A stretch of DNA of 64,000 nt from Euprymna scolopes (Eukaryota): assembly GCA_053919585.1 (NCBI GenBank), contig CM132786.1, one strand, 5' to 3'. The notes beneath the pieces were generated by a model. That model was not told where the DNA came from and searched no databases. It saw only the letters and a list, made by a program, of their open reading frames with translations. The position numbers were made by a program, and so were the translations under genes. Each line of letters opens with the position of its first letter. Positions within the stretch are counted from its first letter, which is position 1. Shown in pieces: positions 1 to 57,500 of this stretch.

Positions 1-227
1 AGATTTTATTAATTAATGCATACATTATTTACTGATTGATGTTTCATAATTTTTGAATGTGTTATAATGATATTGAAAAGAGTGGACAATTACGTAGATA
101 CAATCAATTCATAAAATACCAATAGCATGACTAATTACACAACACTAGATCCTATCAAAGAGTAATGATTTATTCGTATCAACGCTTTGATCATCCAATG
201 CTGATCCAACTATGACGCTCATCTCAA

Positions 228-674: not shown

Positions 675-3600
675 CTGATGACAATATAAACGAGAGACAT
701 ATCTATTTCATAATCCATAGCTAAATCAATTCTGTTAACTTAAGCTTTCTTATAACCTGTTTAGTCGGATGTGATGGTAACTAAGTTACAAACGGCACAA
801 ATTGATGTGACAAGTTTGAATCCAGTTTGTTCTGCAAAAATAATTTCACTTAAAGATTTTGACAACCCTGACAACTCTCATAGACTAAATTTTGTGCAAG
901 ACTCTCGAATTATAATCGAATATAACTTTTCTGTTAACATATCTGGGACAATATTCAGATAAATATCTATCTTTCGATTTTTTTAAATTAAAATTACATC
1001 GGTACAAATAAGCACTGTCACTGAATCGTGATATTTTTTCTAGGATAAATTTTGTTTACATATGAAGCGAATTCCACATACCTAGATATGTTAATCAAAT
1101 ATTTTTCTAAGAGAGATATATTGCAATATTTCACAAAATTTAGAACAAGAATTTTGGACAACGATATTAGCACTCATCTAAAACTTCAGTAACTATCTCG
1201 TTGAGCTTCGTCATATAGACCGCGTGCTGAATGTTAAAGCAATTAAAATGAGTTTTAAAGATATATTTTTTTTCAATTCTATATATAAATAAACAAATTT
1301 ATTTAATGCCGAACAGTTTATCAAATAATTCTAATAACATTCATTTTCTTTCTATGAAGAAATAAGTGATTTTTTTAATGTAGCGGAACTTTTGGAATAC
1401 TGAAAGAAATTTACATTTATTATAAAATATGTAAAAACAATATTTTTTCTACTGTATTTTACATTATTTAATCAAAACGCTAGAAGATTTTAAGGGATTT
1501 GCAGAGAATTCAAATAAAAAAGAACCAGAGAAAATAAAAATAAATAAAATAGACGAATGAAGATTAGATAATACAAATAATAATTTAGGCTAAATATTAA
1601 TTAAAAAAACTACAAAAATACCGAATATAAAAATCCTTTTGAAAGTAATAAATTAATAAAGTACGTATCTGACACAAATTAATGAATTGCCTCTTTCTGC
1701 GAATACGCCTCATTTAAAATAAAACCCACTATGTACGCCTGATGAAAAGATAGCACTACCACATATTGCATGACCGACACACCACTTGACCACCGAACGC
1801 AAGTAAGAACACTCTACATTTAAAATATTGCATAAAAATGCAAATGCATTTGTATATATCTATAGTTCTACATAGATACACATGAATTGGATAAAGTGAA
1901 ACTGCAAAGCTGGTTTCTCCATTATATCTCAAGTTGCTTCAGTTTGAGTCTATACGTTACATTTTTGCATTGTATTGCCTTCTATAAACGTAGATTTATT
2001 TTCTATACATATTAAACAATACCTCAAGCAAACTACTTGACTCTATTAAATATGATATTATTTATTTTCTTTTACTACTGTGTCCTCAAACGAGACATAT
2101 TGTCACCGAAAGCGCCTGTGATTCCACTGAATTAGTAGAAGGCAAATTGAATGAGGAGCTCCTCAAAAAGACACTTCTTCGCGTTACATTCACATGTCTG
2201 TATATTGGGACGATGGGAGAAACGAAGCAAGAATGATAAGCCTTGCGGTCTGAGAGGAAAAGCTTTTAGAATAGTAAAACTTTCTTGCATATGAAAAATG
2301 GGAGTTGGCAGCTAAGAAGCATTTACGTTGATGGAAGTACATGTGCAGTAAATTCATCGAATTACATTCCGTGGAAGTATTTCTAAATCAAGCACAATGA
2401 CACAACACTGCAGCGATGCGGCAGCTTGGTAAGTAGTTCAAAACCTAGTAGGTTAAAATTCATCCTTGCGCTATGTCCTTCAGGTGAATTACTAGATGTT
2501 GGGTCAACTTGCCCAGATTGGGAAACAATACTCAACACGGTTTTATGGTGATTTTGTAGAAATTTAGAATAGTGGCATTAGTTATAAGTTTTCTAGCCCG
2601 ATACAGAGAGCCTGCCCTTGTTACAGTACACTTGGCGGCATCTCTAATGTGTATATTACACACCATGTTGCCTGAGAACGTCATTACATTGTCTCTGTAC
2701 ATTTATTATCTTTTGTGCAATAAATTTTAGAAATAGACTATACTTACTTAAAACTGTAGCATGGAGAAAAACAATAAAAATGCTACCGGCATTATGAGTA
2801 TTAACAAATGGTCTCAGTATCTAAGTGAGTTAGTTGAGATCATGATAATATATTTACTTGGACACCGTCGAGCAGTATGTCAACAGCCCATCTTTTTTAT
2901 TTTAATATTTTCATATGCACCATATTTTACGTTCGAACTATAGCAATTATTCAAACTAATTCAGTTCCTCTCTGTTCTTTTAATTTACACCAAAATTTGC
3001 GGATCTAAATTCGAATGTGTTGAGTTTTCCCAAAGTTCTTATTACTTCTAGCTCCCTATCGACACTAGTTATAATGTAAATGTCTAATCTATCGATTAAA
3101 TAGAATTTATTGTGTGTAGAAGTTTATTAACAAAATATCTTAAAAAGATATATGAACATTTGAAAATACTAAGCATCCAATACATTACAAAGATAACAGG
3201 TTAATATGTTGTGAAAAGAAAACGAAATCTTAAAAAAATCAGCTCAATTTGTTAAAACAATTCTCGTGATAAACTGTCAAATAACTTAATTCAACATCAA
3301 ATTATTCAGAAATGTAAATATACCGCAAGAAAATCTAATCAACCCCAGTTTAGTTCGTTGGAGAGCAAAAGACTGTAGAAATGATCAGTTGTCGTTTTGT
3401 ATCTTATAAATGTGACCGCATACCAATCACCTCTAGCTGACAGCCCACCATCTTCCCGTGCACGTAGACTCACAATAAAACTGATTGATATTTTATGAAT
3501 CAATGTTTAGTCATTTTTATTGATTATAGCACTACGTAACATGTCCTTCGCCCCATTAGCCAACAGTATACCAATTATGCCGAATTTCCATGTATTGAAA

Positions 3601-15780: not shown

Positions 15781-17404
15781 CGCTTATAGTCTAAATTATT
15801 GCTGTATTTTGAGATAGATATATCCAAGATCATGTTTAAAGTGATATCTTTGGCAATAATGTCGATGCTGTGCATCGTAGATACTCACTACAACCAATAT
15901 GACTTCGTAATTTAGATATAAGTTAAACTATGGAGTTTTTTTTGTTAAGTTTATATATGAAAGTGATGCTCTTTGTTAACTGTACAATTTATGTAAATTG
16001 TTGGTCGAACCAGATAAATCACTTTTGGGTGATCATCGTCTTAAGTTACATAGTTTTGAAAATATTCCATATAATATGGAGACAAATAATCCAAATAAAA
16101 TTACTTCGTCAAGCAGAAATATGTGGTCTAATAACTGATTTCTGTTTTTGTATCTTACTATGTAAACTATTTGCTTAACATTGTATATTCTTCAAGTTCC
16201 TAAATCTTAAAATACTTGTTCATTAGCGTAAATTCCTGTCATTGGTTTCGTATCACATTGTTACTCTTGCTAGTGTTCACGTTTATATTATAAGGTTTCA
16301 ATTAATTAAATGCTGTGTTGATTGAATGCCAGCATTATTTATGCAATCACCGCGTCTATTCAAATGTTTTCAAAATAAATTTCTACTATCGGCGTCTATT
16401 TTAGTTACATTTTCACCCTCGCAACAAAAAAACAATAGAAATGTATGCAACAAAACAAATGTTGTTTGTTATCTCAAACAATGATTCTGGAGAGTCTACA
16501 AGGACCGAAAGACAAAAGGAGCAACAAAACCATCTTAAAGGGTAATAAGATTATTGAAATTTTGAATTTTCAAAGAAATCTGTCAGTCGCTCTCAACAAA
16601 AACACGATTGCCAAAGATTGGTGCCACCCAGTGACTATAAAGTGTATATACAAGGAGGCAGATGTACTTGAAATTTGGATATACGTACTGTCATGTAGAC
16701 TACAGGGTACAGGACGTGTTTTTACGAGTGGGTGATATCTGGTAAAGATTTGTTAAGCATAAAGTGTTTTAATGATTATCATTCGTGTATATATACGCTA
16801 AGGCATTCAATTTCTTTACGAAGGTTATTGCTTTTCACGCATTTAAATATGGGAAATATGGGATCGCTAGATGGTGAGCGATAATTTCATTTCATTACTT
16901 AAACTCTTGTCTCCCTACTAGTTCGCTTGCAATTTTGGAAATCCTGACACATACTTTATAAGCTTTTATTTATAGTTGGATGTGTAAACTTTAGTGTTTA
17001 TTTCATTTTTTATCTGTATTCAAATTATTTTTCAAAAATCGTATTATATCATCATTACAACGAATACAGTGCCAATTTAAATAAATACATTTCTAATTTA
17101 TTGAATAATATTAATCTGGCATTTTTTAAAATTTAATAACAAGATACATCGTCATTTTATTTCTTTAAACTATATTTTAATCACATGACAATTATTTTTA
17201 CGGAAGAAGAAAAACCATATGCACATGATCCCAATTTTGTTCGCCCACTTGTCAAATACTTTTGCCACAAGGTTCCACCAGGTGTTACTTTTACATTTGA
17301 AAACTTTTATCTCACTTTGCAGGTTTTCGTAATTTCAATTTTTCCTTTAATATATCAATGATAACTTCCTTACTTTGTGACCCTTCTTGTCTAACAGGAT
17401 TAAA

Positions 17405-17750
17405 TGTCGCAGCACGAGGACGGAGAAAGCTGTGTTAAGCGATATACACGCCAGAAATTCTTTTCAAAGTTGAACGAATGAGTTCTTTCGACTTCTGTCT
17501 TCTCGCAAACGTCGCACTCTTCACAATCAAGTTCTTTTCAACCGTCGACCGACAAAAAAAAAAAAAGAAACGACTCGCAATCTTTGTTTCGGCTTCACTT
17601 TTTATAGCCATCGGGCGAACCCAATTGTCGCGGTAATGCGAGTATCGCTCACAAACGTTTTTCTTTGTAATCTAACGGTCCCAGGTTTGATCCCCGACGC
17701 AGGCACGCACAACTCATACTTTTTGTGCGCTTTTGCGCATGCTCGTGACA
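17405..17750 (-). repeat. 3' LTR (346 bp)
   Basis: TGTCGC...GTGACA on + strand; homologous to 21412-21694 with an extra internal segment; TATAAAAA on minus strand at 17599-17606. Confidence 0.93.
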
Positions 17751-17759
17751 CTCCTCCCT
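17751..17759 (-). other. Polypurine tract (AGGGAGGAG)
   Basis: Purine run on the element strand immediately abutting the 3' LTR. Confidence 0.8.
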
Positions 17760-17786
17760 GATCTCGAGATCACACATATGACAATG

Positions 17787-20745
17787 CTAGGCAGGCCGTT
17801 TCTTCCGGGTACTTTGCTTTAATGGTACAGGTTCAGGAACTTCCTCAGTGGTGCCTTCGTTTGCCGGATCATTAAACTCGTCCTGCTCTGGATCCTCACC
17901 ATCTTCTGAAGAGCTTCCGTCATCATCTTCTGAAGAGCTTCCGGCATTTGGCAGTTCGTATAGCAGTGGGTCTTCGTCACCTGATGAATTTAGTTCATCA
18001 TTGATTATAATGTCATGTCGGCATGCTGGGCGCACATCTTTTATGTGATATTGTGTTCCATCAACTGATATTGAGTGTTGACTATTTATTTTTGTCACTG
18101 TTCCTGTATCGAACTGTGTTGTGCATCTTCCCCGCGGATTCTTCACCCAAACCGCATCCCCTTCCTTGTACGGATTAGCCACTGCGGTCTCAGTCACTCT
18201 CACTTCATCAATACCTTTGATACGGACCCTATAATTGTATAGCATATTCGCAGGTGCTGTCATGGCTGTCTTGTCGTCTTTAGGCGTGACGTTGTACCAG
18301 TACACTGCCTCCAAGATCGTGCACCCTGTTTTTGCCGCAATGCGCTTTATAGTGCGATGGGATCGCTCAATTATACCGTTTCCGAGGGCTACGTGGGCAC
18401 ACCGAAATCGAATGTGCACGCCCCACATTTGTGTAAAATCAGCAATTGTCTTTCCGCAAAACGCTGCACCATTATCTGTGAGCAATTCGGTCGGCGGCCC
18501 CCTTTCGCAGAATATACTCTTCAACCCTTTAATGACGCTAGCCGAATCCTGTCGGTACAACAGCCTCCAAATGGCAAAACAGCTGGGACAACAATTCATC
18601 AATGTCAAGTACACCTGAGTACCGAAATGGGTTATATCCATAGCAACCTTACTCCAGGTGTCCGTGACGTTAAGCCTACCTGGCTTCCAATGCATCGGAG
18701 ATGGATCTATGGATTGGCATTCTTTACAATCCCCAACCACCGATCGCACTTGAGTTTTAGTTATTGTTGGATTGACCAACTTTACAAAGTACCATGTCCT
18801 TTTAACACCGGGATGGCCACTGGACTGATGAATTGTTTGTATCTGAGAATCGTGTTTGTGTTCTGCGGTCACAACGCACACAAGTTCTCTGGGTTCTGTT
18901 GCCTTCCGGATCTCATCTATCCACAGCTGTTGTACTTGAGTAAGTTCATCAGCTCTGTTATCATGAGACTGGACGAGCCTCACGTCGATTATTAATTCAC
19001 ACTCTGAGACCAAATCTCGAAGCGTGAAGACGCGACGCCTGCTTAACATTTCCGAGGATGCTTTAGTGTGTATTCTCGTCTGTCCAGACAAGGTGTCAGT
19101 TATCCACCAATAGACACAGGCAGACTCAATTCGCAAATGTATGGTTTTAGCTTTCCACTGTAATGCAAGGTTGACGCCTCGCAGCACAGCATCAAGCTCA
19201 GCTGAATTTATGTGTTTGTTTCATGCATTTCGCGGAGGCAGCTTGTGTTCTCCGCCACAGAACCGTTGCTTTCCACAACCACGCCTGTAGCAATAGAACT
19301 GGCACCCACTCTTACTATGACTTCTTCTCCACAGATGCATCAGTCACCTTTTACTGGATCTTCCTGGGCTACTCTCAAACAAATGTCTTTGATCATCCGT
19401 GTTAGAATAGGGTCACGCACTTCGTCATCCCATCCAGTTGTGGTCATATTCGCCCTTCGTTTCACAAATGCTGTGGCGACACGCAACCAGCCACACACTG
19501 AGAAATGACCAGTCAGTTTTCCGCACACTAAAAATACAATTCGGCGAGTAAGTATATTAGGTACTGTCGGAAGGCCATGCCGCCATAACAATTTTCCGTT
19601 CTCCTCTTGGACACGTAATCCCAATACACATTAGCCTAGTCTCAACTGTTCTGGGGTCTTGCTTTCCATGCCAAACTTTTCCAAGTGTTCCTTTACACGG
19701 GTTGCCGAACATATGCTTTCATTCACAAAAATTTCATCAATATATGAGGACGTAGCCTCATTTATATTCTTATCCTTACTGAGCTCGGTATTAACAATGG
19801 CCCGCATTATTAGAAGGGCAACGTTCAACCCGAATCCGTGGCGGGTAAGACAATATCGCTGTCCCTTAATTTTTACTGTTTAGAACGGCCACAGAGATTT
19901 GTCAACATGTACTTGCAAATAGGTCGGCGTAGTTCCAGCACTGCAACGTTTGGTCCCTGTTGTCGCATTTCCCTCAATTTTTGTAAGCAAACATCCGTGT
20001 TGGCAGGATGCACATTCACGTACTCATTTAGCTCCCGATAATCCATAACGGGACGCACTTTCTGTTTATTCGCCTGCACAACAGCCATGAGAGGGATTAG
20101 ACCTTTTGGAGGGCCAAGTTCGTCCTCGGGATATGGCAGTAACCAACCATTATCAATCCACACCTGCAATTCCCGATCGTATTCATCACAAATCGGTGTT
20201 GGCACTGGATACTCTGCAAGTCTATTTCTCAATGTAAGTGGAGGTTGTTCGCCAGCCCACTTCCACAATGTAGCCCACTTTTGAGTATCTTGGTCATATT
20301 TGGCAGAGCAGTCAGGCTCGGTAACAGTGATAGCAGCAAAATTGGCCTTGCTAAAATGTGGAAAGGTCACCACTCCTGCGCCAGACACAGCTACTCCTCC
20401 CAGTCGCTTGATTGCGTCCAGTCCAAGCAATAAATCAAATCCCAGTAAATATCCATCCACAACTAGGACTTCTGTGCTAATGCTCCCTGTTGCATCAAGG
20501 TCGACCTGCACCATTCCTACTCCACAGCAGCGTAATGTGCTTCCATCTGCTGTGAGCACGGGGGTTACTTTCCTCGTCCATTCTGTGCAATATGACTTGC
20601 GGACCAGTGACTGTGTGCATCCGGTATCCACCAGAGCTGTGCGTGGTAGTCCAGTGATGAGAACCGTGAGAATTGGCAAGACGCTATTTACACCTGTTTG
20701 AGGGATGAGATTGGCGCTCTCTTCTCGCCCCCTTGCTCGTTTCCC
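17787..20745 (-). pseudogene. pol: pol (protease-RT-RNase H-integrase), frameshifted; RNase H C-half plus integrase open for 466 codons (17787-19187)
   Basis: LVDTGC; VRPVMDYRELN; SSYIDEIF; ELDAV...H.NRAD; H..SGHPG...C..C; MDITH...LTDNG...GNGIIER. Confidence 0.93.
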
Positions 20746-21395
20746 GGACAAAATCGAGCAATGTGCCCTCAACGTGATAGGGTTTCGAGATCTGACCCCG
20801 ATATCTCCTCCTGTTGCACTATCTTGTAACACCTCCGTGAAGTATCTGTGTCCTTGGAGTTAACTGGTGTCGATCGTGCAGCTAATGCAGCTTGCTCTGG
20901 AACTGCCGGGTTAGTCATTAAAATAGCATGAGCATGCGCCAGCACATGAGATAGATTCAAGTTATCCATCTGGGATGATGCCCGCAACAAGTTTTCCGTA
21001 TGTTCCGGCAAACCAGCAATAAATGCACATTGCAGGCATTGATCCGATACGCCGCCAAACAGGACTGCTAGCTTGCGCAACTCCGCCAAAAAGACGTTGA
21101 CTGTTTCACCTGGTTGGAGACGACGAGCGGCGAACTGCTTCCATGCAGCAAGCGGATCCAAAGCAAACGCTGTGTACAGAATTTTCTTTATACACCCAAA
21201 ATCGGCATGCTTTTCCTCACTTAATGGCTAGTACACTGCATAAGCGCCGCCTGAAAAACGCATTGGAATTACACATTCAATGCGCTTTACGCCATTTAGC
21301 TGACATATTAGTTCAGCTTTCTCCAACCACTTCACTATTGACTGCCCAGATTCACTGCCATCAAATATAGGTATAAATTTTGGATCGCAAGCCAT
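20739..21395 (-). pseudogene. gag: gag (short, about 220 codons, disrupted)
   Basis: MACDPKFIPIFDG...WLEKAEL; RRLQPGETVNVFLAELRKLA; degenerate C-terminal zinc knuckle (CY.../GHIARFC). Confidence 0.85.
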
Positions 21396-21400
21396 AATAA

Positions 21401-21411
21401 CCGAAATAGCT
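21401..21411 (-). other. Non-canonical primer-binding site complementary to tRNA-Phe nt 2-12
   Basis: AGCTATTTCGG directly follows the terminal CA of the 5' LTR; reverse complement CCGAAATAGCT equals the start of metazoan tRNA-Phe(GAA) GCCGAAATAGCTCAG. Confidence 0.8.
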
Positions 21412-21694
21412 TGTCGCAGCACGAAGGAGGAGAAAGTTAAGTAATTTATGTTAAGCGATATACACGTCAGAAATTATTTTCAAAGTTGAACGAATCAGTT
21501 CTTTCGACTTCTGTCTTCTCGTAATCTTTGCTCCGGCTTCACTTTTTATAGCCGTTGGGCGAACCCAATTATCGTGGTAATGCGACTATCGCTCACAAAC
21601 GTTTTTCTTTGTAATCTAACGGTCTCACGTTCGCTCCCCGACGCAGGCACGCACAATTCATACTTTTTGTGCGCTTTTGCGCATGCTCGTCACA
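21412..21694 (-). repeat. 5' LTR (283 bp)
   Basis: TGTCGC...GTCACA on + strand, homologous to 17405-17750. Confidence 0.93.
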
Positions 21695-21937
21695 GTTTCA
21701 ATCAAATTGCCACTCTCCCCCACATTTCATGGAGCATGTTCGTGCTATTTTCGCTACTTTCCACCACCATCTTCTTACAATAGACTTTTCTAGAAACATT
21801 ATGATAACGCATTTTGTCCTTTTTTAAGCTAACATTCCACAATTACTGACGATTGATATGTTGTAGGTTCTCACTTTGTTACCCACACAATAACGAACTT
21901 TCAGCCATGTCATACTTCACATAATTTGTCCTTACCG

Positions 21938-23150: not shown

Positions 23151-25841
23151 AATACTACATAAATGATACTTTTCGAGCAATACCTGAAAATAAAATTCTT
23201 TAAATATTCCAATTACAGTAACTAAATAATTAGGTGTTTATTTTACATATATAGTATGAATGTACGACTTTCCTCTCCATTTATTCATCTGCAGGGACTT
23301 ATTTTATGTTTCGACGCCAATGTATACAAGACAATTATAATTAAGTTCTATTCGCGAACTTTTCGTTTCCTTGTTCAATATTTCCTCTTGAGGAGATAGA
23401 TCAATTACTTGTATATTGATTATACAATTCGATAGTACTTCTCAACAAAAGGTTGTCTGTCGTTCTACATACGAAATATGCATAAAGTGATTGCTATTTT
23501 TACAGTAGGTTTTACCTATAAAGCTGCATTGTTTGGTTGTGAATATGTAAATCGCTCAGCGGGTCAGCTTTTAGTTCGCAAGTTTTGCAGTAGATACTAC
23601 AAACTAGCGCAATTTCTTCCGTTTTTCTCGAAATTTCTTCACTATTTTTTGCGCAATCGGTTGCTAGTGAGGTCTGTCACGTAGTCTAAGCGTATAGGGT
23701 AGGCTAAGATATAGACACCAAACACAGGTAGGGGTAGATTATGGCTAGGAAATAACTAGATAATGAAACTTAGTCTTGAAGCACGAATAAGAATTTTTTT
23801 AAACTCGCAATATCTTTTTTGTGCTAAGACCTAGTGTTACATGATAAGGGCTGTCCCCTTTTCATGTAAGTATAAAAATACAGAGATTTAGTTAAAATGA
23901 AAATTAAATGAGAGAAAGCAGGAATCGAACCCTGGAGATAAGTTTTAAAGAACAATAGGTGTAAATGGAATGTTCAGTAAATTGTTGATTCTGATGAAAA
24001 AAATAATAAATAAACTATCATTGTTAGAAAGAATGTGGATAATAAAATATGGGTTAAATGAATTAGATATGTAGGTGAATTCCTTTGTGAAAACAACAAA
24101 GAAAAAATGGGAAATCAGAATGTTCGGAAACGTGCAGGTAGCGCATGTTGATGGCACGTGAATTGTGGTCATGTTGGCCGGACATGCATGGATTTCTCAA
24201 TATAGGAAGTGAGAGTTAGAGTAGTCAGAAGAAGGGAGGCAGAGAGTCAGAGTCAGGCGAGAGTTTGACCAGGGAAGAGAAGGTTCAGTTCGAATCTTGG
24301 CCTCTGGAAGCGAGAGGGATTTAAACAGAAAAAGATGTAAAGAAAGAACCTTTGAATTTCTGAATGCAAAGCCATTGACCGGTCAAGGGAAGAATAAATG
24401 CTCATCATGTTTTTTTTCGTAACTGCCGTCTCCTGTGTCCATCATTACATGAAAAAGGTATTGTCTATTTATGTGTAAAAACCATTTGAAATTCATCATC
24501 TAAAAAATATATGTGTTAGAAAGTATATGTGTCTATTTATGTTATACAAACACTCCCGTTCATACGAACTGTCAAAGCATAAATGCCAACCTGTCAATCC
24601 ATCGGCATAAATGCCAACCTATCGGTCTGTCTATCTAGATATGAAAACACCTTCTCAAAATGTATTTATATGCAATCTCTCATTTATAAACTCTCACTCT
24701 CTCTTTATATACACCTGTTAATGTTACCATATCTCAGATCTCTTACTTCCCTGAACACTCTTAAGACTCTAATCTCTCCTAAGACTGTCTATCACTCTAA
24801 GACTTTCTAATACAAACAATAACACTAAATAAGAACTCATGTAACATACGCGCACAAGTGGTACCTTCGTCTAATAATAACACCCTTACGTAACACTAGA
24901 TAAGCGATCATCTACATTAGATTTAGGAGTTAATTTTGTACCGTAAGCAAAATAGTCCTCTTTAGATGTCATCTCTTCATATGCGGCATCATCTAAGCTT
25001 GCTGTTGCATGAGTAAAAGATTCCATCAGAATTTAGGTACTTTTTTGGATTAGAATGTTCGAACCATTTTCCATCGATCTTGTTAACAGGTTGGAAACAT
25101 ATTTTTTCTTATAAATCTAGAATGATAGTAATTAAAATTTTCTTCGAAAAAAATATTTAATTAAGAATAGAATTGTTGCAAAAATTAGGCAAAGTTACTT
25201 TAAAGATGTAAAGAGTATTTTTTACCGTTGCACCACATGCTCCGGATCCTAGATCCAGAAAATCAGTGAGATTTTTGTCATCAATGCTCTTCAAAATGCT
25301 GCCATAGAAAAGTATGTCATTTGGGTAAATCTCAGTTAATAATCTAATGGTATTTTCTGTCAATTTCTTAATAAAGATCAAAATGAGTGTCTAACAGAAT
25401 GAATTGGTGAATATATTATGGGAAGTACATGGATCAATACGTGATCAGAATTTAACGACTAAACTATTGAAAGCACAATGATCGCTCATTTTTTTAATGA
25501 AATACTTGGGCAGCTAACAAAGTAAATGGACTCGATTCTATCGTAAGATATTACCACGAAATTAAGTAAAATATATACCATAGATTTTTTTCGTCTCATT
25601 AGAAAAACGGTGAAAAGTTGTCGAAAACAAACATTCAGACAGTATATAGACGTATGAATCTTCTACTTGTCCTTTAATGTGAGTTTTTGTACTTGGCTAT
25701 GTTTTACTAATAAATTTGGTTCGATTTAATTTTCATATCACTTAGTAGGTGCACCCATAGAGAATATTCCAAAATAGTAAAAAAAAAAAATCCGTGTCGC
25801 TGTAAAAAACTGATTCGATTTGTTTCACGGCATATTCATTT

Positions 25842-26165
25842 TATTGGACAGTTTATCCTGGCCAAAACTAAAAATAGAATGGTCATTCTTTTGAGTAAAA
25901 CAAGTTGAATTTCAAATTATTCGCTGTAAATAGACAATTTGTAAAAACACGTAATGTATTAATATTTTATATAGTTTTAATTCCTACATGAATTAACAAA
26001 CGCTGTCCAGGTTGTTGCTTATATACTTATATACTTATATACTTATATACTTATATACTATAGATTTTGGTAGTCATGAGCAAAACAAAGAAACGTTCAT
26101 CAAGTCTAAAAATGCCCAGTAAAAAATAAAAATATAAAACGATGTTTGATAAGAAGAATCTCTCT

Positions 26166-26205
<40 letters not shown>

Positions 26206-27053
26206 TTTTTTTTTTTTTTTTTGCACACTCTCCTTTTTTTCTTAATCATTTTCATGATTTAGTGACATAACTTCCGGGTCATCAGTACAAAATTAATAAA
26301 TTTCCGACCTCAGATTTCTGCCCAATCAAACGCTTTCGGAATTCGATATCTTCTTCATGTGATTTTATGTTTTATTTTTTTATTTTTTTCATTTTTAAAA
26401 TGTTGCTTCCTATTTGAAGTGTTGGAATCAAAATTTGCCTTTGAACTGCCGAAAACCATTATATCTTTGTGCAAAAAAAACAGGTTTCCTTCAGCTTAAA
26501 ACGTTCGCGGTGCACGCAAAAACGACATTCAATTTTCCCGTTTCACCGTCAGTAGGAAATCAGTATTTCATGTGAATTAACCATACGTTCAAACGACGCC
26601 GATTCAAAAACAATGCTCTCGCTAGTGAAAGAAATACCGATTTTATATGCTCAAATTCGACCGCATCTTTATTTGCATATGTCATTTTTTCTTTTCCTAT
26701 CGGTCAGGTTTCGAATTCGAGTGGCGGTAACTTTGCTCAATGCACATACGTCACTCTTGGACGCTTGTTTCCATTACAGTTCTCACAGTATTGTAATGGA
26801 AAAAATTATAGTTTAATTAAATCTGTAATTGATTTATTTACTTCCATATTATTTATCTATAATTAGTTTTGTTTTATATTGTCGAAGGCAATACAGTGTA
26901 GTTTTATCTGTATTATTATGTTTATTATTTTAATTAATTTTTACAGCGCTTGTTTAATTGTAAGATAATATATGCTTATATTAAATAATATATATTTTAT
27001 TATTATGGACATATGTATATGTTTTTATGTACTTAATCGTAGATAAAATACTT
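25842..27053. repeat. ~1.2 kb direct-repeat unit, copy 1
   Basis: Colinear similarity with 30440-31662 throughout, including the internal (CT)n tract. Confidence 0.93.
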
Positions 27054-27489
27054 TTAAATATGCACACATATATATATAATATACATGTATATATGAATCG
27101 TTCATTCGTTATTAATAGTCTAAATGACCACTAGACCGATAGCTTCGGCATTTTGGTATAATATGTTTACTGTAACAATGCGTGTTTTTATATATCTCTT
27201 TTTAATTATAACATTATACTTAATTTTCTTTAATAAATAGGTGGATTTCTTTGTAAGGATTTGGTCATTTGTTTATTCAGGGACATATATTTATCATCGC
27301 CCGCCATCACGTGACATCACTAAAAGGAACTTTTATATAATAAACTGACTGTTTTCGTTTAAAAATCGAATTGTTTCCATTTCGTTAATATTTTTTTTTG
27401 GTATTTCGTGTTTTATATATATAAAGTACAATTGCTGAATGTTATTCTTTTGATTATATTGGTTTGAGGGCACGATTAAGAAAACGATT

Positions 27490-30160: not shown

Positions 30161-30439
30161 TTATAGATGTTTACACTGATGGTTGCCTTATTCCGCCATA
30201 TAATAACGTGTCGAAACGAGAAGTCACCTTCAGAAATCTGGTTTAGTTTTTTTTTTCATTTCTAGGAAACATCATGCTCAGAGATTTTACTATTAGTTGC
30301 GCTCACGCTCGTTCGAACACACAACCCTATCTAAATAAATAAGTACCACGCCAATAGAACGAAAATTACAAATAAAGACTGTAGATTTTGAACAAAAAAA
30401 ATAATCAGTATTCTTTCAGGTATGTTTACTATTGATTTA

Positions 30440-31662
30440 TATTGGACATTTTATCCTGACGAAAACTTAGAATAGAATAATCATTATTTTGGGTGAAACA
30501 AGTTGGATTTCAGATTATTCACTGCAAATAGACAATTTGTAAAAACACGTAAGGTATAATTATTTTGTATAGTTTTATTTCCTACATGAATAACAAATTG
30601 CAGTCTACCTTGTGGCTTATATGCTCAAATACTATAGATTTTGGTATTCATGAGCAAAACAAAAAACGTTCAAGTCTAAATATGCCCAGTAAAAAATAAA
30701 AATATAAAACGATTTTTAATAAGGATAATCACAAGAATTCAATCTCTCTCTCTCTCTCGCTCGCTCGCTCTCTTTCTCTTTCGGTCTCTCTATCTCCTGC
30801 TCTGTTTCTATGACCATCTTATTTTCTTAATCATTTTCATGATGTAGTGACATAACTTCCGGATCATCAGTATAAAATTCATAAACTTCCAACTTTTGCT
30901 TTCTGACCAATAAAACGTTTTCGGATTCCGATATCCTTTTCAAATGATTTTATGCTCTATTATTTTCATCCAATGTTAAAATATTGCTTTGTATTTGAAG
31001 TGTCGAAATTAAAATGTGCTTTGAATTGCCGAATTCCGATATAGGTTCGTACAAATTTTTTTTTTCCTTCAGTTTATAACGTCCACGGCACACGCAAAAA
31101 CACATTCTTTTTTTCCTGTTTTACCGTTCGTAGAAAATCAGTGTTTCTTTCTTTCCATTGACACGTGAACTAACCGTACGTTCAAACGACGCCGAGTCAA
31201 AAAAAATGTTTTCGCTAATGAAAGAAATTCCAGCATTTTATATGCTCAAATTCGACCGCATCTTCATTTGCATATGGCATCTTTTCGTTTCCTATCGATC
31301 GGGTTTCGAGTTCGAGTTCGAGTGTCGGTAACTTTTCAGAATGCACATACGTCACTCTTGGACGCTTGTTTCCATTACAGTTCTCACGGTATTTTAAGGG
31401 AAAGAAAAATAGTAATGCAATTAAATCTGTAATTGATTTATGTATTTGTATATATTTTATCTGTTGATTGCTTTTGTTTTATATTGTCCAAGACAATACA
31501 GCGTAGTTTCATCTTTAATATCATGTTTATTATTTTTATTAATGTTTACAGCGCTTGTTTAATCATAAGATAATATATACATATATTCATATTTAATAAA
31601 TATTTGAATTATTATCGACATACGTATATGTTTTTATATACTCATTCATAGATAAAATACTT
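30440..31662. repeat. ~1.2 kb direct-repeat unit, copy 2
   Basis: Colinear similarity with 25842-27053. Confidence 0.93.
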
Positions 31663-31678
31663 ATCAACAAGCACCCAC

Positions 31679-31724
<46 letters not shown>

Positions 31725-34457: not shown

Positions 34458-34902
34458 GTGATGATAATATATAAATGTGTGGGTAACTTGGATTATTTCA
34501 GTAATTGAATTTGGTAAGTTGCTTTATACTTAACAAAGTCGATAGCCATAAGTCGCGTGCTCTCGTGTAATGAATGAATGCGTGAATGTAGGATTGACAT
34601 GAAATTCTTAAAGATAAACTAAAATGACCGAAAAATGGGCTGAAATGACTTAAATAAATAAAAAGTAAATGACTTAGAATGATTTTAATGTAACTTAAGG
34701 ATGAATTGAATGACCTTAAGAATGACTTGAATGCTTAAAAAATAACTGAAATCCTTAAAAAAACAACTTGAATAATCTGGAGAATGACTTGAATGGCTTT
34801 GAGACTGACTGGTTGTAAAGTGGGTGATATTTTTACATTAAATTAATACAGGAAAGTGATCCCCCACTTTATACTACAATAAGTAAAGCATTTAGTAAGA
34901 CT

Positions 34903-34943
34903 AGATACTACACTTTGATCTTGGCCAAAAGGCCAAGAAAAGC
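34903..34943 (-). pseudogene. U2 snRNA 5' fragment (about first 40 nt)
   Basis: Minus strand GCTTTTCTTGGCCTTTTGGCCAAGATCAAAGTGTAGTATCT matches U2 stem-loop I and the branch-point recognition sequence GTAGTA; similarity stops there. Confidence 0.88.
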
Positions 34944-34987
34944 TGTATTTATTTGCTCGTCCACCGAGCAAATTAGGAACAAGGCCG

Positions 34988-35786: not shown

Positions 35787-36952
35787 ATTTTTTACAAAGG
35801 AGACACCGGAAGCCACTCGAAGATAAGGGTTAATGGCTGTACAGTTTTCAATGAGACAATATCGTTGTAATCGTTAGTAGTGAAAATTTGGTCAATTGGA
35901 TTACGTTGGCCTTGAAGACGGCCACATTGTAGTAAGCTGGAAAGCAGGGAAATGGAAGAGAGTTCTACAGGTGTGCACTTCTAAGAAGGAAGCTTTGTTC
36001 ATGGAATCTACGTTTAGGTTTAGGCAGTGGGAGAAATTATTGATAGTTGTTTCGGGTAGACGAGTGTGTTCGTGTGGGAGAATTATAGTTTGGAGCACAT
36101 ACGAGAACTTGCCATGAAAATAAGGATACAGGATCGCAACGTTTATTTTGTACGAAAGAGGGTGCAAGGAAGAGAAAAAGGCATCCTCCACTAGGCTACA
36201 AAGTCTATTTTGAACTCTGTCAAGGCAGGATAAGCTGCGTCTAGATTTCCCTGTTCAGATGTGGCAACAGTACTCCATCCTTGGCTCTTATACAGGTAGA
36301 CAATTGCATCAGTAGTGAGATATCTACTGGAGCGGTAGAATGATCCCGGACGTTGCAACGGATTTAATGCACGTGTTTCATTTCATACCAGGAGTAAAGG
36401 TCAGCCTAAAGCTTGTCAAAACATGGAGCCTCTCCAAGACGAGAACCATTCATTTCAATTGATGCAAGACGGGGATCAGAGCGTTGATGATGTAAAGATA
36501 GGAGCTCGGGTTTAGATGCATTAAAAGTAACCAGCTACCTCTTTCCCAATTATACCACGTTCTAATATAACACAAAGGAGAGAGAAATCAGAGAGAACTT
36601 GGTCATTCCCGGCACTTGAAGTGTTGTCATAGATGGTAGTGTCGTTAACATAAATGTCTACGAATGATCTTTGGGCGTGATTTGGGAGATCATTAATGTG
36701 GATCAAGAAGAGAGTTAGGCCCCTGATTAACCCTGATAGATTCCAGCATTAATATTGTGAGCTTCTGCTTTCTCCCCATCGACCACTGCTCTTATGAACC
36801 TATAAGAGAGAAATTATTTAATAATTGAGAAAACATTTTCAGCTATACTGTAGCTAGAGATCTTGTGGAGTAGACCATTTATATATCCTACCAAAGGCCT
36901 TTGATATGTCAAGAGCAATTGCCCTAGAAAGAAAACCTCCATCGAGAGATTC
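35787..36952 (-). mobile_element. LINE family B, 3' part (runs into assembly gap)
   Basis: RAIALDISKAF, INDL RT motifs; colinear with 45163-46380. Confidence 0.92.
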
Positions 36953-53900: not shown

Positions 53901-54579
53901 GTTCACAGGAAATATGAGTTGGAACAATTACATTGAGAAAATGGCCAGGATCGCTGCGAAAATGGTAGGGTCTCTCTTCCGTGTTAGAAAGCTATTAACG
54001 CCCGAAAGTATCCTATACCTCTATAAAGCCACCATTCGCACATGTATGGAATATTGTTGTCATATTTGGGCTGCTGCATCTGCCACTAGTCTCTCGCTCC
54101 TAGACAAGGTTTAAAAGAGAGTCGCAAATCTAATAGATCCTAAACTGTCATCTCAACTTCAGCCTCTGTTCCATCAACGAAATATTTCATCCCTTCGCCT
54201 GTTCTACAACTACTTTAATGGTGAATGCTCTGACGAACTGCAAGCACTTGTGCCCCCTCGACGTAAATACCCCCGACAAACCCGACAAGCAGCAAAATCC
54301 CACCCCTTCACGATACAGATCCCTAGATTAAGACAGCCTTTTACTCCAGAACCGCTAGACTTTGGAACTCCCTTTCCCCAGAAATGCTAGATTGTGGAAT
54401 CCCCTTCCAGATCCCTGCTTCCCCAACTGTACTGACATGCAGAAGTTAGTGTAACGTGAACTGACATCTTGCTGCTCAACTCCCTATACAGTACCCTGGA
54501 TGTTTATGTACCTGATAGTAGCCCCCTACAACAAAATGGCAATGTGCCTTGTTTGGGGTGAAAATGCAATAAAAAAAAA
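51000..54579 (+). mobile_element. LINE family A, near full length, degenerate (APE endonuclease plus RT, CR1/Jockey group)
   Basis: AFTNIRGLRTN, GDFNVHH, LDLF, YRPISLL, ALDISKAFDRVWH, GVPQ, YADD, MEYCCHIW; poly(A) at about 54571-54579. The 5' limit is approximate. Confidence 0.95.
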
Positions 54580-57500
54580 TTCTTCAGTACATTCGATCAT
54601 TGTCATTTAAAGCCTACCCCTGTAATGGATTACATCAACTGCCAGTCTTTCCCAGGTCCCAGTCATATCCAGTTCTTCAGCTTCGTGCATGCTTGGAGCA
54701 GGGACAATTGACTGACATCTGTCGCAAGTCCTAACCACTTGCTTTACCTGTTTCCTTGGTGACACTCGGATGGACTTTTCTCACCATGTACAACGTCCTT
54801 ACTACCCCTATCTGGTGTAGATCGTGCAACTCTCGCACCCAAGAATTATCCAGATCAGACACTGCAGCAACATCCTCATTTTGGGGCACGAGCTAACTCT
54901 TTTTCACTCTCGTGAAAACATCTGATTTGTTCTTCTCAGAGGCCACCACGATTACGCGCAGAAATCTCCCGAATCAGCTCAGCCAGCATTCCAAGCTTGC
55001 GCTACACCAGCATCTCTACTGTCCCTTTCGTTTTTACCCTTTTATCGTTTGAAATCATTGATTTTAACCAGGCAAACACAGTTGCAGAGTCTGTTTTCAT
55101 AGACGTCGCGTAGTTTATATTTGAAGGTCACATTCATTCCTTTGGTAACTGCATCCAATTCTGCCACATTGATGTAGCTATCATCATCCTCATCATCAGC
55201 CAGGCCGCCTCCTGCGCAACCACTTCATCCACTTCCAAGACGACACATGTTACCATGTTGCTTGCATCACAGCACACGACCCCATCCAGTGTTCGAGACA
55301 CGTTCAATGTTCCCTGAACTGAGTCTTGCCTTTCCACTTCTTTCAGGACCTCTTCAGTTAAGTAACCGTTCTTCCTCCTAATTTATCGTCCCATCCTCTT
55401 CTTTCGGCATGTCTCTTGATGTAGTTGCATGTGGTCTAAACCAGCTGGCAACGGAGTAATCCCCGATCTGTCTGGCGCATACGGAAAAAGCTCCCACTTG
55501 TCGAGCTCTTCTTTCATTTGTGGGATCTCATTCCCTCTTCGAAATTCTTGGCCACCTGACTCACTTCGTTTCAGATTTAGCCCCAAGGTCGCTCCCCGGT
55601 CATATTCTTCAGGTGCCTTGGCGACCAGCCTGAACTTCTTCAATTGAATCACCACGTCCTTTGCTGTATCAGAGTTTCATTTACGAGAATGTCATCGATG
55701 TACGAGCTCACGGCACAATCGCTCCAAAACCTTTCTAAAATTGTGGAAATGATATTTGGTGCCGAGTTCAACCCGACCCCTACCAACGTAAGGCAATAGG
55801 ATCTGCCTTTATATCTGACCAACTGGTAATTCCAAAGTTTTTTGGCGATGCGGATTTGCAAGACGGCAGATTTCAGATCGATCAACGTAGTCGCATTTTT
55901 CATTTGCCTCCATTCACTGCATACATCTACAGCGTCACCCCCAGTATGGAACTCAACATGTTTTTTCAACTCTTGGAAATCTAGAACTGGTCTGACCTTC
56001 CATTTTGTTGGTTGCAGAACTGCCATCAATGGCAAGATGCCCGATTCGACGTCATCCGTTCACGCAACAGTATACCGTCCTCAATCCATCTGTCCACTTC
56101 TCGTTCAAAATACTCACTTACTCCTCCTTTAACCGAATTATTAACGCATGCAACCCTGTTTGTTAGCGTAGGCGATTTATCCTGCCACGCTCACTCCACT
56201 GTCCACTAAATCTCGTCGAATTCTGCTTGAAAATCCGGGTCACTGATCGAGATCCATCTCTTTTCTCTGACATCTTTGCGCCCTTCGTTGACCTGTTCTG
56301 CCACTGCTGCGCACCTTGTCGGTCCTGATCTCACGTCATTGCTACTTACTGTAACATCACCAAGTAGGCATATTACGTCCATTTCAACAATCGTTTGAAC
56401 ACCAGGCACCAGTTGATCGGTGACAATTGCATGTACCCTCATCCGCTGATCCACTTGTGACGGTCCTCCTCCCTCGACACTTCACTCGTGACCCATCAAA
56501 TGCCACTATTTCGCCCTTCCATTTCCATCTTTCGACCAGACTTTTGTGCACCATAGTAGTGATACAACCAGTGTCGATCGGATCCGTGACTTATTGTCCT
56601 TCCACAACAATCTCTCGCTTGGGCATCTGCTGTGAGCGCGTCATTATTCCCAAGGCGGAACAGCTGCTGGTGCTTTGGCTCCCCTTTTGCTAGTTTCCCG
56701 GACTCGTGTAGTTCACTGCGATGTGCGCACCATGGTTACACCTGTGGAACACTATCTTTTCGTTGAACTTCCTATAGTCTTTCCGCAAGTGAAGCCCCTC
56801 ACATTGGAAACATGCACATCACGGTGTCAGCCGACTTCTGCTCACATCCTTCCGCGCTGTTGCCACCGTTCCTACGAAACTTGAGGGTTGAGTGCTCACT
56901 AATATTTTCGCAGTTGAGAGCAGCTCGCTCACCTTCAAGGACCTTCTGTAACCTCTTGAAAATCTCCTCCTTGAACCCGGTGACAAACGCCATCTTGGCA
57001 AGGTGACATGCTGCCTGCCTCCTAATTCCTGATAGTTCCAATAATCTGTTATTATTATCTTATTATCTTACACGGCGACGGATTCCTTCCTCCACCTAAT
57101 TTCTGCTGAACACCTCAAACGGACCTCTCAGCAAGTGCCTGGATCAATCTGACTTTAACTGCGTCAGCATCATCTTGTTCCAGCCCATTAATCTCCAAGT
57201 ATAGGGCTAGGGCACCCCCCGCCAGGAATAATGGTATCACTATGGCAAAATAGAATATATTTAGGAGCTTCACCACTAGGTTCAATTTTTTTTAGCCAAG
57301 ACACCACATCGCCTTCGCCACTGAATAACTTTATCATATTGTTTAGACCGGTTGCCATAGCCGAAATAGCTTGTTCCTTTGTTGATCAAGCTGTGAGAAG
57401 TCGTAACAGCTGTCCTCCAAACACGTGGCTAGACATCCAACAATCGTCAAAGGTCACAATCCTACTTCTAAACTCAGGCTGCTTTTATACTATCTATCTT

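What the first reader, a model, noticed from the sequence alone, without database searches (positions are those of the whole stretch)
21395..21420. LTR retrotransposon primer-binding site complementary to the 5' END of tRNA-Phe, not to a 3'-CCA end
Seen: directly after the CA of the 5' LTR the element strand reads AGCTATTTCGG with no TGG, and the gag ATG follows only 16 nt after the LTR. The second, much diverged LTR element has AGCTATTTCGGC at the identical position (57360-57371). Established: metazoan tRNA-Phe(GAA) begins GCCGAAAUAGCUCAG. Canonical PBSs start with TGG and pair with the tRNA 3' end; known exceptions are copia/Ty5 (tRNAi-Met cleaved in the anticodon arm) and Tf1 (11-nt self-primer released by RNase H). 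Inference: minus-strand synthesis is primed by a 12-nt 5' fragment of tRNA-Phe ending at U12, or from an internal hydroxyl. The register is exact, since the first DNA nucleotides added would be the LTR-terminal TG. I cannot check whether this has already been described for a gypsy-like group such as Troyka.
Basis: partly seen in the sequence, partly recalled or inferred. Interest (0 to 1): 0.9.

Follow-up and report, generated by a model that had tools for sequence, protein, structure and literature searches.

The report
Retrotransposon primer site matching tRNA 5' end
Two dead copies of a compact LTR retrotransposon carry, exactly where the reverse-transcription primer must bind, 12 bases complementary to the first 12 bases of tRNA-Phe; over 50 relatives from other animals have the same site, in two cases re-matched to tRNA-Lys, pointing to a priming mode I found described nowhere.

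Summary
On the minus strand, element 1 reads LTR...CA|AGCTATTTCGGT|TATT|ATG (12-mer at 21400-21411). Element 2 reads CA|AGCTATTTCGGC|T|ATG (57360-57371). The two elements share only about 39% protein identity and no detectable DNA similarity.

I fetched 92 related loci from a nematode, barnacle, cuttlefish, sea spider, crab and metagenomes. In 58 of them a 12-mer of the form AGCTA-NNNN-GGC follows the LTR-terminal CA. Five-base target-site duplications fix that LTR boundary in four loci. Twelve variants exist. Three are exact complements of published tRNA 5' ends: Phe(GAA), Lys(CUU) and Lys3(UUU). No element has a TGG-type site. A sense copy of the 12-mer (at most 1 mismatch) occurs in only 1 of 57 elements, so Tf1-like self-priming is not supported.

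The family is not Troyka. It has TG..CA ends, 5-bp duplications, YIDD/YVDD and a CX2CX4HX4C knuckle.

Most likely mechanism (inferred, not shown): the site pairs with tRNA nucleotides 1-12, a cut after U12 supplies the 3'-OH, and plus-strand synthesis runs off at tRNA G1.

I found no description in the open literature, though Repbase and subscription journals could not be searched. I rate it a new variant of tRNA priming, interest about 0.8.

The parts
21412..21694 (-). Element 1, 5' LTR (283 bp, TGT...ACA); putative TATA box TATAAAAA at 21550..21543
   Evidence: Direct repeat with 17405-17750; ends read; TATA position (promoter role inferred).
21400..21411 (-). Element 1 primer-binding site AGCTATTTCGGT, the reverse complement of tRNA-Phe nt 1-12 with a G1-U wobble at the last base
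   Evidence: tRNA-Phe 5' end from PMC10505166. The same position is occupied in 58 of 92 related loci.
21393..21399 (-). 4-nt spacer TATT and the gag start codon ATG (21395..21393)
   Evidence: tblastn of the family protein P0103 starts at aa 20 at 21386.
17787..21395 (-). Element 1 gag-PR-RT-RNase H-IN coding remnant. It is near full length (matches P0103 aa 20-1138), but has 3 frame changes and 5 in-frame stops, so it is a dead copy.
17751..17759 (-). Polypurine tract AGGGAGGAG immediately before the 3' LTR
   Evidence: Similar G-rich tracts (GGGAGGAG, GGGGGGAG or GGGGGCG) lie before the 3' LTR in L001, L018, L068 and L207.
17405..17750 (-). Element 1, 3' LTR (346 bp; 63-nt insertion and 9-nt deletion relative to the 5' LTR)
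57360..57373 (-). Element 2: LTR-terminal CA (57373..57372) followed by the primer-binding site AGCTATTTCGGC (57371..57360)
54568..57358 (-). Element 2 gag-pol remnant (ATG at 57358..57356; matches P0103 aa 40-958). It is heavily degraded, no 3' LTR was detectable, and a non-LTR retrotransposon fragment lies just beyond it.

Best explanation
The 12 nt that follow the 5' LTR are the minus-strand primer-binding site of a compact gag-pol LTR retrotransposon lineage. The lineage is about 4.2 kb long, has one ORF of about 1170 aa, TGT...ACA ends and 5-bp target duplications.

The site does not pair with the 3' CCA end of a tRNA. It pairs with nt 1-12 of a host tRNA: the 5' strand of the acceptor stem, then U8 and A9, then G10-C11-U12 of the D stem. 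In this host, and in a barnacle and a cuttlefish, the 12-mer matches the published (human) tRNA-Phe(GAA) 5' end. Two other elements match tRNA-Lys(CUU) and tRNA-Lys(UUU).

Shown: the exact complementarity, the zero-spacer register with the LTR-terminal CA, family-wide conservation, the switches between tRNAs, and the absence of a TGG site or a self-primer.

Inferred:
(a) Gag's zinc-knuckle domain melts the acceptor and D stems so that the 12-bp RNA duplex can form (predicted -17 to -25 kcal/mol).
(b) The tRNA is cut between nt 12 and 13. The most likely agent is the element's own RNase H, by analogy with Tf1, whose RNase H cuts at the end of an 11-bp RNA duplex. This cut leaves a 3'-OH on U12.
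(c) RT extends from U12, and the first bases added copy ...ACA, which gives the LTR end TGT.
(d) Plus-strand strong-stop synthesis from the polypurine tract copies the 12-nt RNA primer and runs off at tRNA G1. This would explain why conservation stops exactly at nt 12, and why the site stays a perfect copy of a tRNA 5' end.
For: The LTR boundary is set independently of the motif. A second copy of the U5 end is followed by unrelated flank right after CA in L001, L002, L018, L068, L088 and L207. Five-base target duplications flank L002 (ATTTC), L068 (GAGTC), L207 (TAAAC) and L088 (GCAAC). In every one of these loci the 12-mer starts at the next base.

The motif is widespread: 58 of 92 family loci carry CA+[A/C]GCTA-NNNN-GG[C/T]. 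Of 49 loci with a locatable gag start, 38 are strict matches and 7 are one-step variants.

There are twelve variants. Three are exact reverse complements of published tRNA 5' ends: Phe GCCGAAATAGCT, Lys-CUU GCCCGGCTAGCT and Lys3 GCCCGGATAGCT. If the 12 variants were random draws from the 256 possible, the chance that all three were included is about 8e-5.

Invariant positions correspond to tRNA G1, C2, C3, U8, A9, G10 and C11. Variable positions correspond to acceptor-stem nt 4-7. In the Lys-CUU case the site is GCCGGGC, the perfect complement of the 5' strand. From memory, the tRNA's own 3' strand there contains G-U pairs, so the site is not a copy of it.

L065 and L073 begin with CGCTA instead of AGCTA, so the D-stem part also changes.

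Diverged elements within one host share one variant. The two window copies are 39% identical in protein. The two Trichuris suis copies are 53-58% identical to P0103 and both carry AGCTATCGAGGC.

On an RT tree the variants need at least 18 changes over 49 rows, and the Phe type recurs in at least 3 well-supported separate places. This fits a small host-imposed repertoire.

No self-primer is present, and there is no conservation after nt 12.
Against: There is no biochemical evidence of any kind.

The host tRNA sets could not be read. No tRNA gene lies in the window or in any family locus. Nine of the 12 variants are therefore not tied to a known tRNA.

The sea spider (GCCGUGAUAGCU) and a scrambled crab fragment (GCCUAGAUAGCU) do not carry the 12-mer that insects and vertebrates use for tRNA-Phe. 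Those hosts must either have a divergent tRNA-Phe or supply another tRNA.

A 12-nt tRNA 5' fragment ending inside the D stem is not a recognised abundant fragment class. The nuclease that makes the cut is unknown.

The information-content profile is partly circular, because the loci were picked with a pattern that fixes positions 1-5 and 10-12. Only positions 6-9 and 13 onward are free.

The literature check covered open-access papers and bioRxiv only.
Confidence: 0.7

Rival explanations
1. The pairing is the same, but the primer is a pre-existing 12-nt 5' tRNA fragment made by a host nuclease and packaged as such. The element's RNase H plays no part in making it.
For: The sequence evidence cannot distinguish who makes the cut. 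Copia uses a 5' fragment of tRNAi-Met whose nuclease is also unknown (established knowledge).
Against: Known 5' tRNA fragments end in the D loop or the anticodon loop, not after U12 (established knowledge, from memory). A free 12-mer would be hard to select and package specifically.
Confidence: 0.15
2. Tf1-like self-priming: the 5' end of the element's own transcript carries the complementary 12 nt, folds back on the site and is cut by RNase H.
For: There is no TGG, the site is short, and its length (12) is close to Tf1's 11. One element (L013) has GCCTATATAGCT, 1 mismatch, 327 nt upstream.
Against: In 43 non-redundant elements the best sense match in the 600 nt upstream averages 4.0 mismatches for an element's own variant against 4.2 for foreign variants. 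Only 1 of 57 elements has a match with at most 1 mismatch anywhere from 700 nt upstream to 4.6 kb downstream. L001, with 100% identical LTRs, has none. Both window LTRs have nothing better than 4 mismatches.
Confidence: 0.03
3. The primer is another small RNA that shares the tRNA-like 5' end, for example a tRNA-derived SINE transcript or a pre-tRNA, rather than a mature tRNA.
For: Twelve nucleotides cannot tell a tRNA from an RNA derived from it. Position +13 is A in 28 of 51 elements, which could pair with a U at position -1 of a precursor.
Against: Conservation ends at the base that pairs with mature G1. The A bias at +13 is weak, and non-templated addition at run-off explains it equally well. 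Exact matches to three different canonical tRNAs favour the tRNAs themselves.
Confidence: 0.05
4. The 12-mer is conserved for a reason other than priming, such as tRNA binding for packaging or translation control, or a leader element for gag translation. Minus-strand synthesis would then start in some unrecognised way.
For: The ATG lies only 0-60 nt downstream, so the 12-mer sits in the 5' leader.
Against: There is zero spacing to the LTR-terminal CA in every element whose LTR is defined. Nothing else between the LTR and the ATG is conserved. An LTR element needs a primer at exactly this base to regenerate its LTR end.
Confidence: 0.05

Closest known systems
copia, 1731 (Drosophila) and Ty5 (yeast): priming by a 5' fragment or the anticodon stem-loop of initiator tRNA-Met
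   Same: A host tRNA is used but not its 3' CCA end. The site lacks TGG. The primer's 3'-OH must be made by cutting the tRNA internally.
   Different: In those elements the site pairs with the anticodon-arm region of tRNAi-Met, and the primer is about 39 nt long. Here the site pairs with the extreme 5' end (nt 1-12) of Phe or Lys tRNAs, and the primer would be 12 nt. Those elements are Ty1/copia with IN before RT; this family has the order PR-RT-RH-IN.
Tf1/Tf2 (S. pombe) and other self-priming elements of the Tf1/sushi group
   Same: The RNA:RNA primer duplex is short (11 bp against 12 bp) and lies directly after U5. The primer's 5' end is a natural RNA 5' end, so plus-strand synthesis can run off it. 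An RNase H cut at the end of the duplex is the likely source of the 3'-OH.
   Different: In Tf1 the primer is the element's own transcript 5' end. Here no complementary sequence exists in the element, and the site matches host tRNAs. No chromodomain was detected.
Conventional retroviral and Ty3/gypsy primer-binding sites (TGG..., complementary to 8-18 nt at the tRNA 3' end)
   Same: The position immediately or nearly immediately after U5, the use of a host tRNA, and clade- and host-dependent switching between tRNAs.
   Different: The opposite end of the tRNA is used. There is no TGG. The site has a fixed 12-nt length with zero spacer.
Troyka / Kuafuorterviruses (PMC12440569, PMC11673190)
   Same: Compact metazoan LTR retrotransposons with a single gag-pol ORF that fall outside the classical Gypsy clades.
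   Different: Troyka has CG...CG termini, 3-bp target duplications, an I/V/L-ADD RT motif and a CX2CX8-10HX4C knuckle. This family has TG...CA, 5-bp duplications, YIDD/YVDD and CX2CX4HX4C. Neither Troyka paper mentions a primer-binding site.

Membership tests
Troyka / Kuafuorterviridae | 5'-CG...CG-3' LTR termini | tested here: not met
   LTRs start with TGT and end with ACA in the window element and in L001, L002, L018, L068, L088 and L207.
Troyka / Kuafuorterviridae | 3-bp target-site duplications | tested here: not met
   5-bp duplications in L002, L068, L207 and L088.
Troyka / Kuafuorterviridae | RT motif IADD/VADD/LADD and Gag knuckle CX2CX8-10HX4C | tested here: not met
   P0103 has YIDD and CFSCGGMGHFAREC; P0222 has YVDD.
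Tf1-type self-priming LTR retrotransposons | Transcript 5' end (inside the LTR) perfectly complementary to the site after U5 | tested here: not met
   no such sequence in 56 of 57 elements, and own variants match no better than foreign ones.
Tf1-type self-priming LTR retrotransposons | RNase H of the element cuts the RNA:RNA primer duplex | not testable with these tools
   Needs enzyme assays. An RNase H domain is present (PF00075/PF13456).
copia/Ty5-type internal tRNAi-Met priming | Site complementary to the anticodon stem-loop region of initiator tRNA-Met | tested here: not met
   The site is complementary to nt 1-12 of Phe or Lys tRNAs.
copia/Ty5-type internal tRNAi-Met priming | Ty1/copia pol order (IN before RT) | tested here: not met
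   The order is PR, RT, RNase H, IN.
Conventional tRNA 3'-end primed retroelements | TGG-initiated site complementary to ...CCA-3' within a few nt of U5 | tested here: not met
   No TGG and no conserved block other than the 12-mer between the LTR and the ATG.
BEL/Pao (Belpaoviridae) | Pfam signatures Peptidase_A17, DUF1759, DUF1758, DUF5641 | tested here: not met
   None found at E<=0.01 in P0103 or P0222, nor in the precomputed lists.
Ty3/Gypsy (Metaviridae) | PR-RT-RH-IN order, TG..CA ends, 4-6 bp target duplication | tested here: met
Ty3/Gypsy (Metaviridae) | Gypsy-type RNase H (Pfam RT_RNaseH / RT_RNaseH_2) and a GPY/F module after the IN core | tested here: inconclusive
   The RNase H hits PF00075 and PF13456, not the Gypsy families. 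The C-terminal consensus W..G.VT has no GP[YF]. The best solved relatives are retroviral integrases, with Ty3 weaker. No RT tree with reference clades could be built.
LTR retrotransposon (general) | Two LTRs, polypurine tract, gag-pol, target duplication | tested here: met
   The window copy itself shows no intact duplication (GAAAC against TTTAA).

The most novel reading that the evidence does not exclude
A widespread and apparently unnamed lineage of metazoan LTR retrotransposons (found here in a nematode, arthropods and a mollusc, plus metagenome contigs of unknown host) primes minus-strand DNA from the 5' end of host tRNAs. A 12-nt leader (nt 1-12 of tRNA-Phe, tRNA-Lys and others) would be released by a cut in the D stem, probably made in trans by the element's own RNase H. 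This would be a third way of using a tRNA as primer, after the 3' end and the anticodon arm. It would also be a mechanistic bridge between tRNA priming and Tf1 self-priming. As a side effect, standard LTR annotation tools, which look only for tRNA 3' ends, would report the whole lineage as lacking a primer-binding site.
Probability: 0.5. Interest if true: 0.88.

Novelty: new variant of a known kind. Interest (0 to 1): 0.8.

Why it matters
Every textbook account of retroviral and LTR-retrotransposon replication has the primer tRNA bound by its 3' end. The two known exceptions are copia/Ty5, which use the anticodon arm of tRNAi-Met, and Tf1, which primes itself.

A site that pairs with tRNA nt 1-12 would add a third tRNA-based solution. 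The site is conserved across a lineage found in several animal phyla and is re-matched to different tRNAs. It raises concrete, testable questions:
- Which nuclease cuts a tRNA after U12?
- How are the acceptor and D stems unwound?
- Do 5' tRNA fragments restrict these elements in the way 3' fragments restrict mammalian endogenous retroviruses?

It matters for annotation too. The PBS-finding approaches I know of, for example the 3'-end search described in PMC13524379, look only at tRNA 3' ends, so they would report these elements as lacking a primer-binding site.

The family's protein features are also unusual: a cellular or retroviral-type RNase H, integrase closest to retroviral ones, and no BEL or Gypsy signature domains. 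Its place among reverse-transcribing elements deserves a proper tree.

Tried and rejected
Self-priming. I searched both window LTRs, the identical LTRs of L001, and 43-57 relatives for a sense copy of the 12-mer. Nothing rose above background.

Conventional site. There is no TGG and no second conserved block.

Troyka membership. Rejected on termini, target-duplication length, RT motif and zinc knuckle.

BEL/Pao membership. No signature Pfam families.

Third copy at 10158. AACTATTTCGG preceded by CA has no family coding sequence nearby, so I treat it as chance.

Host tRNAs. ARAGORN found no tRNA gene in the window or in any family locus, and no tRNA-Phe box is present in the loci. Literature searches for the unexplained 12-mers found nothing useful. 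A scan of viral contigs for GCC[GT][AC]GATAGCTCAGT returned phage or bacterial tRNAs, mostly Phe(GAA) and Thr. That shows such 12-mers are ordinary tRNA 5' ends but says nothing about the animal hosts.

tRNA-like stretches. An apparent one in the element 1 LTR and another in the L029 leader are called by neither Rfam nor ARAGORN.

Other steps. The viral-contig search for relatives gave nothing. The window elements dropped out of the RT tree because their frameshifts shorten the aligned segments. The 3' LTR of element 2 could not be found.
Full report
What is in the window

Reading the minus strand, element 1 is a 4,290-bp LTR retrotransposon spanning 21694..17405.
- The 5' LTR is 283 bp (21694..21412) and the 3' LTR is 346 bp (17750..17405). 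Both start with TGT and end with ACA. They are about 91% identical over aligned bases and differ by two indels.
- The 3' LTR is preceded by the polypurine tract AGGGAGGAG.
- Directly after the 5' LTR come AGCTATTTCGGT (21411..21400), the spacer TATT, and the gag ATG (21395..21393).
- tblastn with a full-length relative shows that the internal part covers aa 20-1138 of an 1174-aa gag-pol. It has three frame changes and five in-frame stops, so this is an almost full-length but dead copy.
- Domains: gag with a zinc knuckle, aspartic protease, RT, DUF7047, RNase H and integrase.

Element 2 (57373..about 54568, minus strand) is much more decayed. I could not detect a 3' LTR. It reads ...ACA|AGCTATTTCGGC|T|ATG.

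The two elements share about 39% amino-acid identity and give no blastn hit to each other. The 11-mer occurs exactly twice in 64 kb, both times at this junction.

Is the 12-mer the complement of a tRNA 5' end?

The published human tRNA-Phe(GAA) forward primer is GCCGAAATAGCTCAGTTGGGAG (PMC10505166). Its first 12 nt are the reverse complement of AGCTATTTCGGC. The window holds no tRNA gene, and the host's identity is hidden, so the host's own tRNA-Phe could not be read. From memory, insect and vertebrate tRNA-Phe share these 12 nt.

Relatives

A search of 1.84 billion protein representatives with the protease/RT-start ORF, and a word-index search with the integrase ORF, found hundreds of relatives. 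I fetched DNA around several of them. A metagenome scan with an alignment of gag-PR-RT added 80 more loci. This gave 92 family loci in all.

The named hosts are Trichuris suis, the barnacle Amphibalanus amphitrite, the cuttlefish Acanthosepion pharaonis, the sea spider Nymphon striatum and the crab Chionoecetes opilio.

The LTR boundary is fixed independently of the motif

In L001, L002, L018, L068, L088 and L207 a second copy of the U5 end is followed by unrelated flank immediately after CA. In L002, L068, L207 and L088 a 5-bp target-site duplication brackets the element (ATTTC, GAGTC, TAAAC and GCAAC). In each of these loci the 12-mer starts at the very next base.

Conservation and variation

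- Of the 92 loci, 58 contain CA followed by [A/C]GCTA-NNNN-GG[C/T].
- Among the 49 loci where the gag start could be located without reference to the motif, 38 have the strict form between LTR and ATG. Seven have one-step variants: an insertion, a mutated CA, or a mutated GGC. Three have too little upstream sequence, and one has nothing.
- The pattern used to collect the sites fixes positions 1-5 and 10-12. Only positions 6-9 and 13 onward are an unbiased read-out. Positions 6-9 vary in a restricted way, and positions 13-28 carry at most 0.34 bit.

Twelve variants were seen:

| 12-mer | Loci | Comment |
|---|---|---|
| AGCTATCTAGGC | 13 | tRNA not identified |
| AGCTATTTCGGC | 12 | complement of tRNA-Phe nt 1-12 |
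| AGCTATCGCGGC | 12 | tRNA not identified |
| AGCTATCACGGC | 7 | tRNA not identified |
| AGCTATCCCGGC | 3 | tRNA not identified |
| AGCTAGCCGGGC (L006) | 1 | exact complement of tRNA-Lys(CUU) nt 1-12 (GCCCGGCTAGCT, PMC12140204) |
| AGCTATCCGGGC (L057) | 1 | exact complement of tRNA-Lys3(UUU) nt 1-12 (GCCCGGATAGCT, PMC8715211) |
| five other variants | 1 each | tRNA not identified |

These counts are from the first 86 loci. Loci fetched later add further copies of variants already in the table (L088, L205-L208).

If the 12 variants were random draws from the 256 possible, the chance that all three of these known tRNA 12-mers were among them is about 8e-5.

The invariant positions are those that pair with tRNA G1, C2, C3, U8, A9, G10 and C11. 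The variable ones pair with acceptor-stem nt 4-7. L065 and L073 start with CGCTA, so the D-stem part can change too.

Named hosts and within-host sharing

- Barnacle and cuttlefish elements carry the Phe type.
- Two Trichuris copies, each only 53-58% identical to P0103, both carry AGCTATCGAGGC.
- The sea spider carries AGCTATCACGGC, and a scrambled crab fragment carries AGCTATCTAGGC.

On an RT tree the variants need at least 18 changes over 49 rows. The Phe type appears in at least three well-supported separate places.

Rivals tested

Self-priming in the manner of Tf1 requires the complementary sequence at the transcript start inside the LTR.
- Neither window LTR has a match better than 4 of 12 mismatches, and neither do the 100% identical LTRs of L001.
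- Over 43 non-redundant elements, the best match in the 600 nt upstream averages 4.0 mismatches for an element's own variant against 4.2 for foreign variants.
- Only 1 of 57 elements has a match with at most 1 mismatch anywhere in the element.

A conventional site is absent: there is no TGG and no other conserved block. The motif cannot pair with the tRNA 3' strand, because for tRNA-Phe its last seven bases are identical to that strand, not complementary to it.

How it most likely works

The pairing, the register and the comparative pattern are shown. The chemistry is inferred.
- The 12-bp RNA duplex is predicted at -17 to -25 kcal/mol. Forming it requires melting the acceptor stem and most of the D stem, a task that fits the zinc-knuckle Gag.
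- The base before the site is the A of the LTR-terminal CA, which cannot pair with tRNA C13. The duplex therefore ends at U12.
- A 3'-OH on U12 would let RT add T, G, T..., giving the LTR end TGT in exact register.
- By analogy with Tf1, whose RNase H cuts an 11-bp RNA duplex (established knowledge, from memory), I consider a cut between nt 12 and 13 by the element's own RNase H the most likely source of the primer. I give that step a probability of about 0.4. A host-made fragment is the main alternative.
- During plus-strand synthesis the primer would be copied up to its natural 5' end, G1. That accounts for the sharp end of conservation at nt 12, and for the fact that intact copies are perfect complements while old copies are mutated (element 1 here, L034, L039, L062).
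- Position +13 is A in 28 of 51 elements (binomial p about 2e-4 without correction for relatedness). This would fit non-templated addition at run-off, but it is only a hint.
- All variants pair with an A at tRNA position 9. tRNAs with G9 usually carry m1G9, which blocks pairing (established knowledge, from memory). This may explain the restriction to Phe/Lys-like tRNAs.

What family is this?

It is not Troyka/Kuafuortervirus. Those have CG..CG ends, 3-bp duplications, xADD RT motifs and a long-spaced knuckle (PMC12440569, PMC11673190). This family has TG..CA, 5 bp, YIDD/YVDD and CX2CX4HX4C.

It lacks the BEL/Pao Pfam families. Its RNase H hits the cellular/retroviral-type models rather than the Gypsy ones. 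The 61-aa DUF7047 sits where an RT thumb would be, and there is too little room for a retrovirus-like tether domain. The closest solved structures by sequence are retroviral integrases and RTs, with Ty3 weaker. I could not build a tree with reference clades, so the lineage remains unnamed here.

Is it known?

Ten full-text searches of about 8.4 million open papers and preprints found no description of a primer-binding site complementary to a tRNA 5' end. Searches for the unexplained 12-mers found nothing useful. The Troyka, Kuafuortervirus and Odin papers do not discuss primer-binding sites. A 2026 survey of metazoan Gypsy elements looked only at tRNA 3' ends (PMC13524379). Reviews list only the 3' end, copia/Ty5 and Tf1 modes. 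Repbase Reports and subscription journals were not searchable, so prior description cannot be excluded.

Verdict

The mechanism is still inferred. I rate it a new variant of tRNA-primed reverse transcription, with interest about 0.8.

Noticed in passing
window 60085-60200 (+) and 34819-34944 (-): A 5S rRNA match (48.5 bits, full model length) and a short U2 snRNA match (48.4 bits, just above threshold; 126 nt for a 192-position model) lie in TE-rich sequence. They may be pseudogenes or retro-copies.
   Followed up: no
window 25839-27078 and 30437-31687: Two blocks of about 1.25 kb, 82-92% identical and about 4.6 kb apart (families D2, D5, D8-D12, D14). They look like the long LTRs of another, unrelated LTR element, or a segmental duplication.
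   Followed up: no
window 36116-36548 and 45559-46007: Another diverged direct-repeat pair (76-82% identical, about 9.45 kb apart), possibly the LTRs of an old large element.
   Followed up: no
window 148-767: A tandem array with a 20-bp period and about 30 units.
   Followed up: no
window 51758-52315 (+): An ORF with an endonuclease domain of non-LTR retrotransposons (Exo_endo_phos_2, E=1.8e-8), just beyond the truncated 3' side of element 2.
   Followed up: partly
family-wide (P0103 aa 636-830; window about 19624-18700, minus strand): The family's RNase H matches the cellular/retroviral-type Pfam models (PF00075, PF13456), not the Gypsy RT_RNaseH models. Its integrase is closest to retroviral ones in the PDB. 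No BEL/Pao domains are found. The lineage may be an unnamed deep branch of LTR retroelements.
   Followed up: partly
position +13 after the primer-binding site, 51 family loci: The base after the 12-mer is A in 28 of 51 elements, although nothing else downstream is conserved. This is possibly a trace of non-templated addition when plus-strand synthesis runs off the primer's 5' end.
   Followed up: partly
L029:1850-1945: Between the primer-binding site and the gag ATG of one metagenome element there is an insert of about 90 nt. By eye it resembles a tRNA (GGTTCGAACC T-arm-like stretch) followed by an oligo-T run. Neither ARAGORN nor Rfam calls it.
   Followed up: partly
L001:9548-12735: An internally deleted copy (gag and protease missing; ATG fused to the RT start) has 100% identical LTRs and an intact primer-binding site. 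This suggests recent mobilisation of a non-autonomous derivative. No target duplication is visible.
   Followed up: partly
window 21695-21699 vs 17400-17404: Element 1 has no matching 5-bp target duplication (GAAAC against TTTAA), unlike four relatives. This may reflect decay or recombination between two copies.
   Followed up: no
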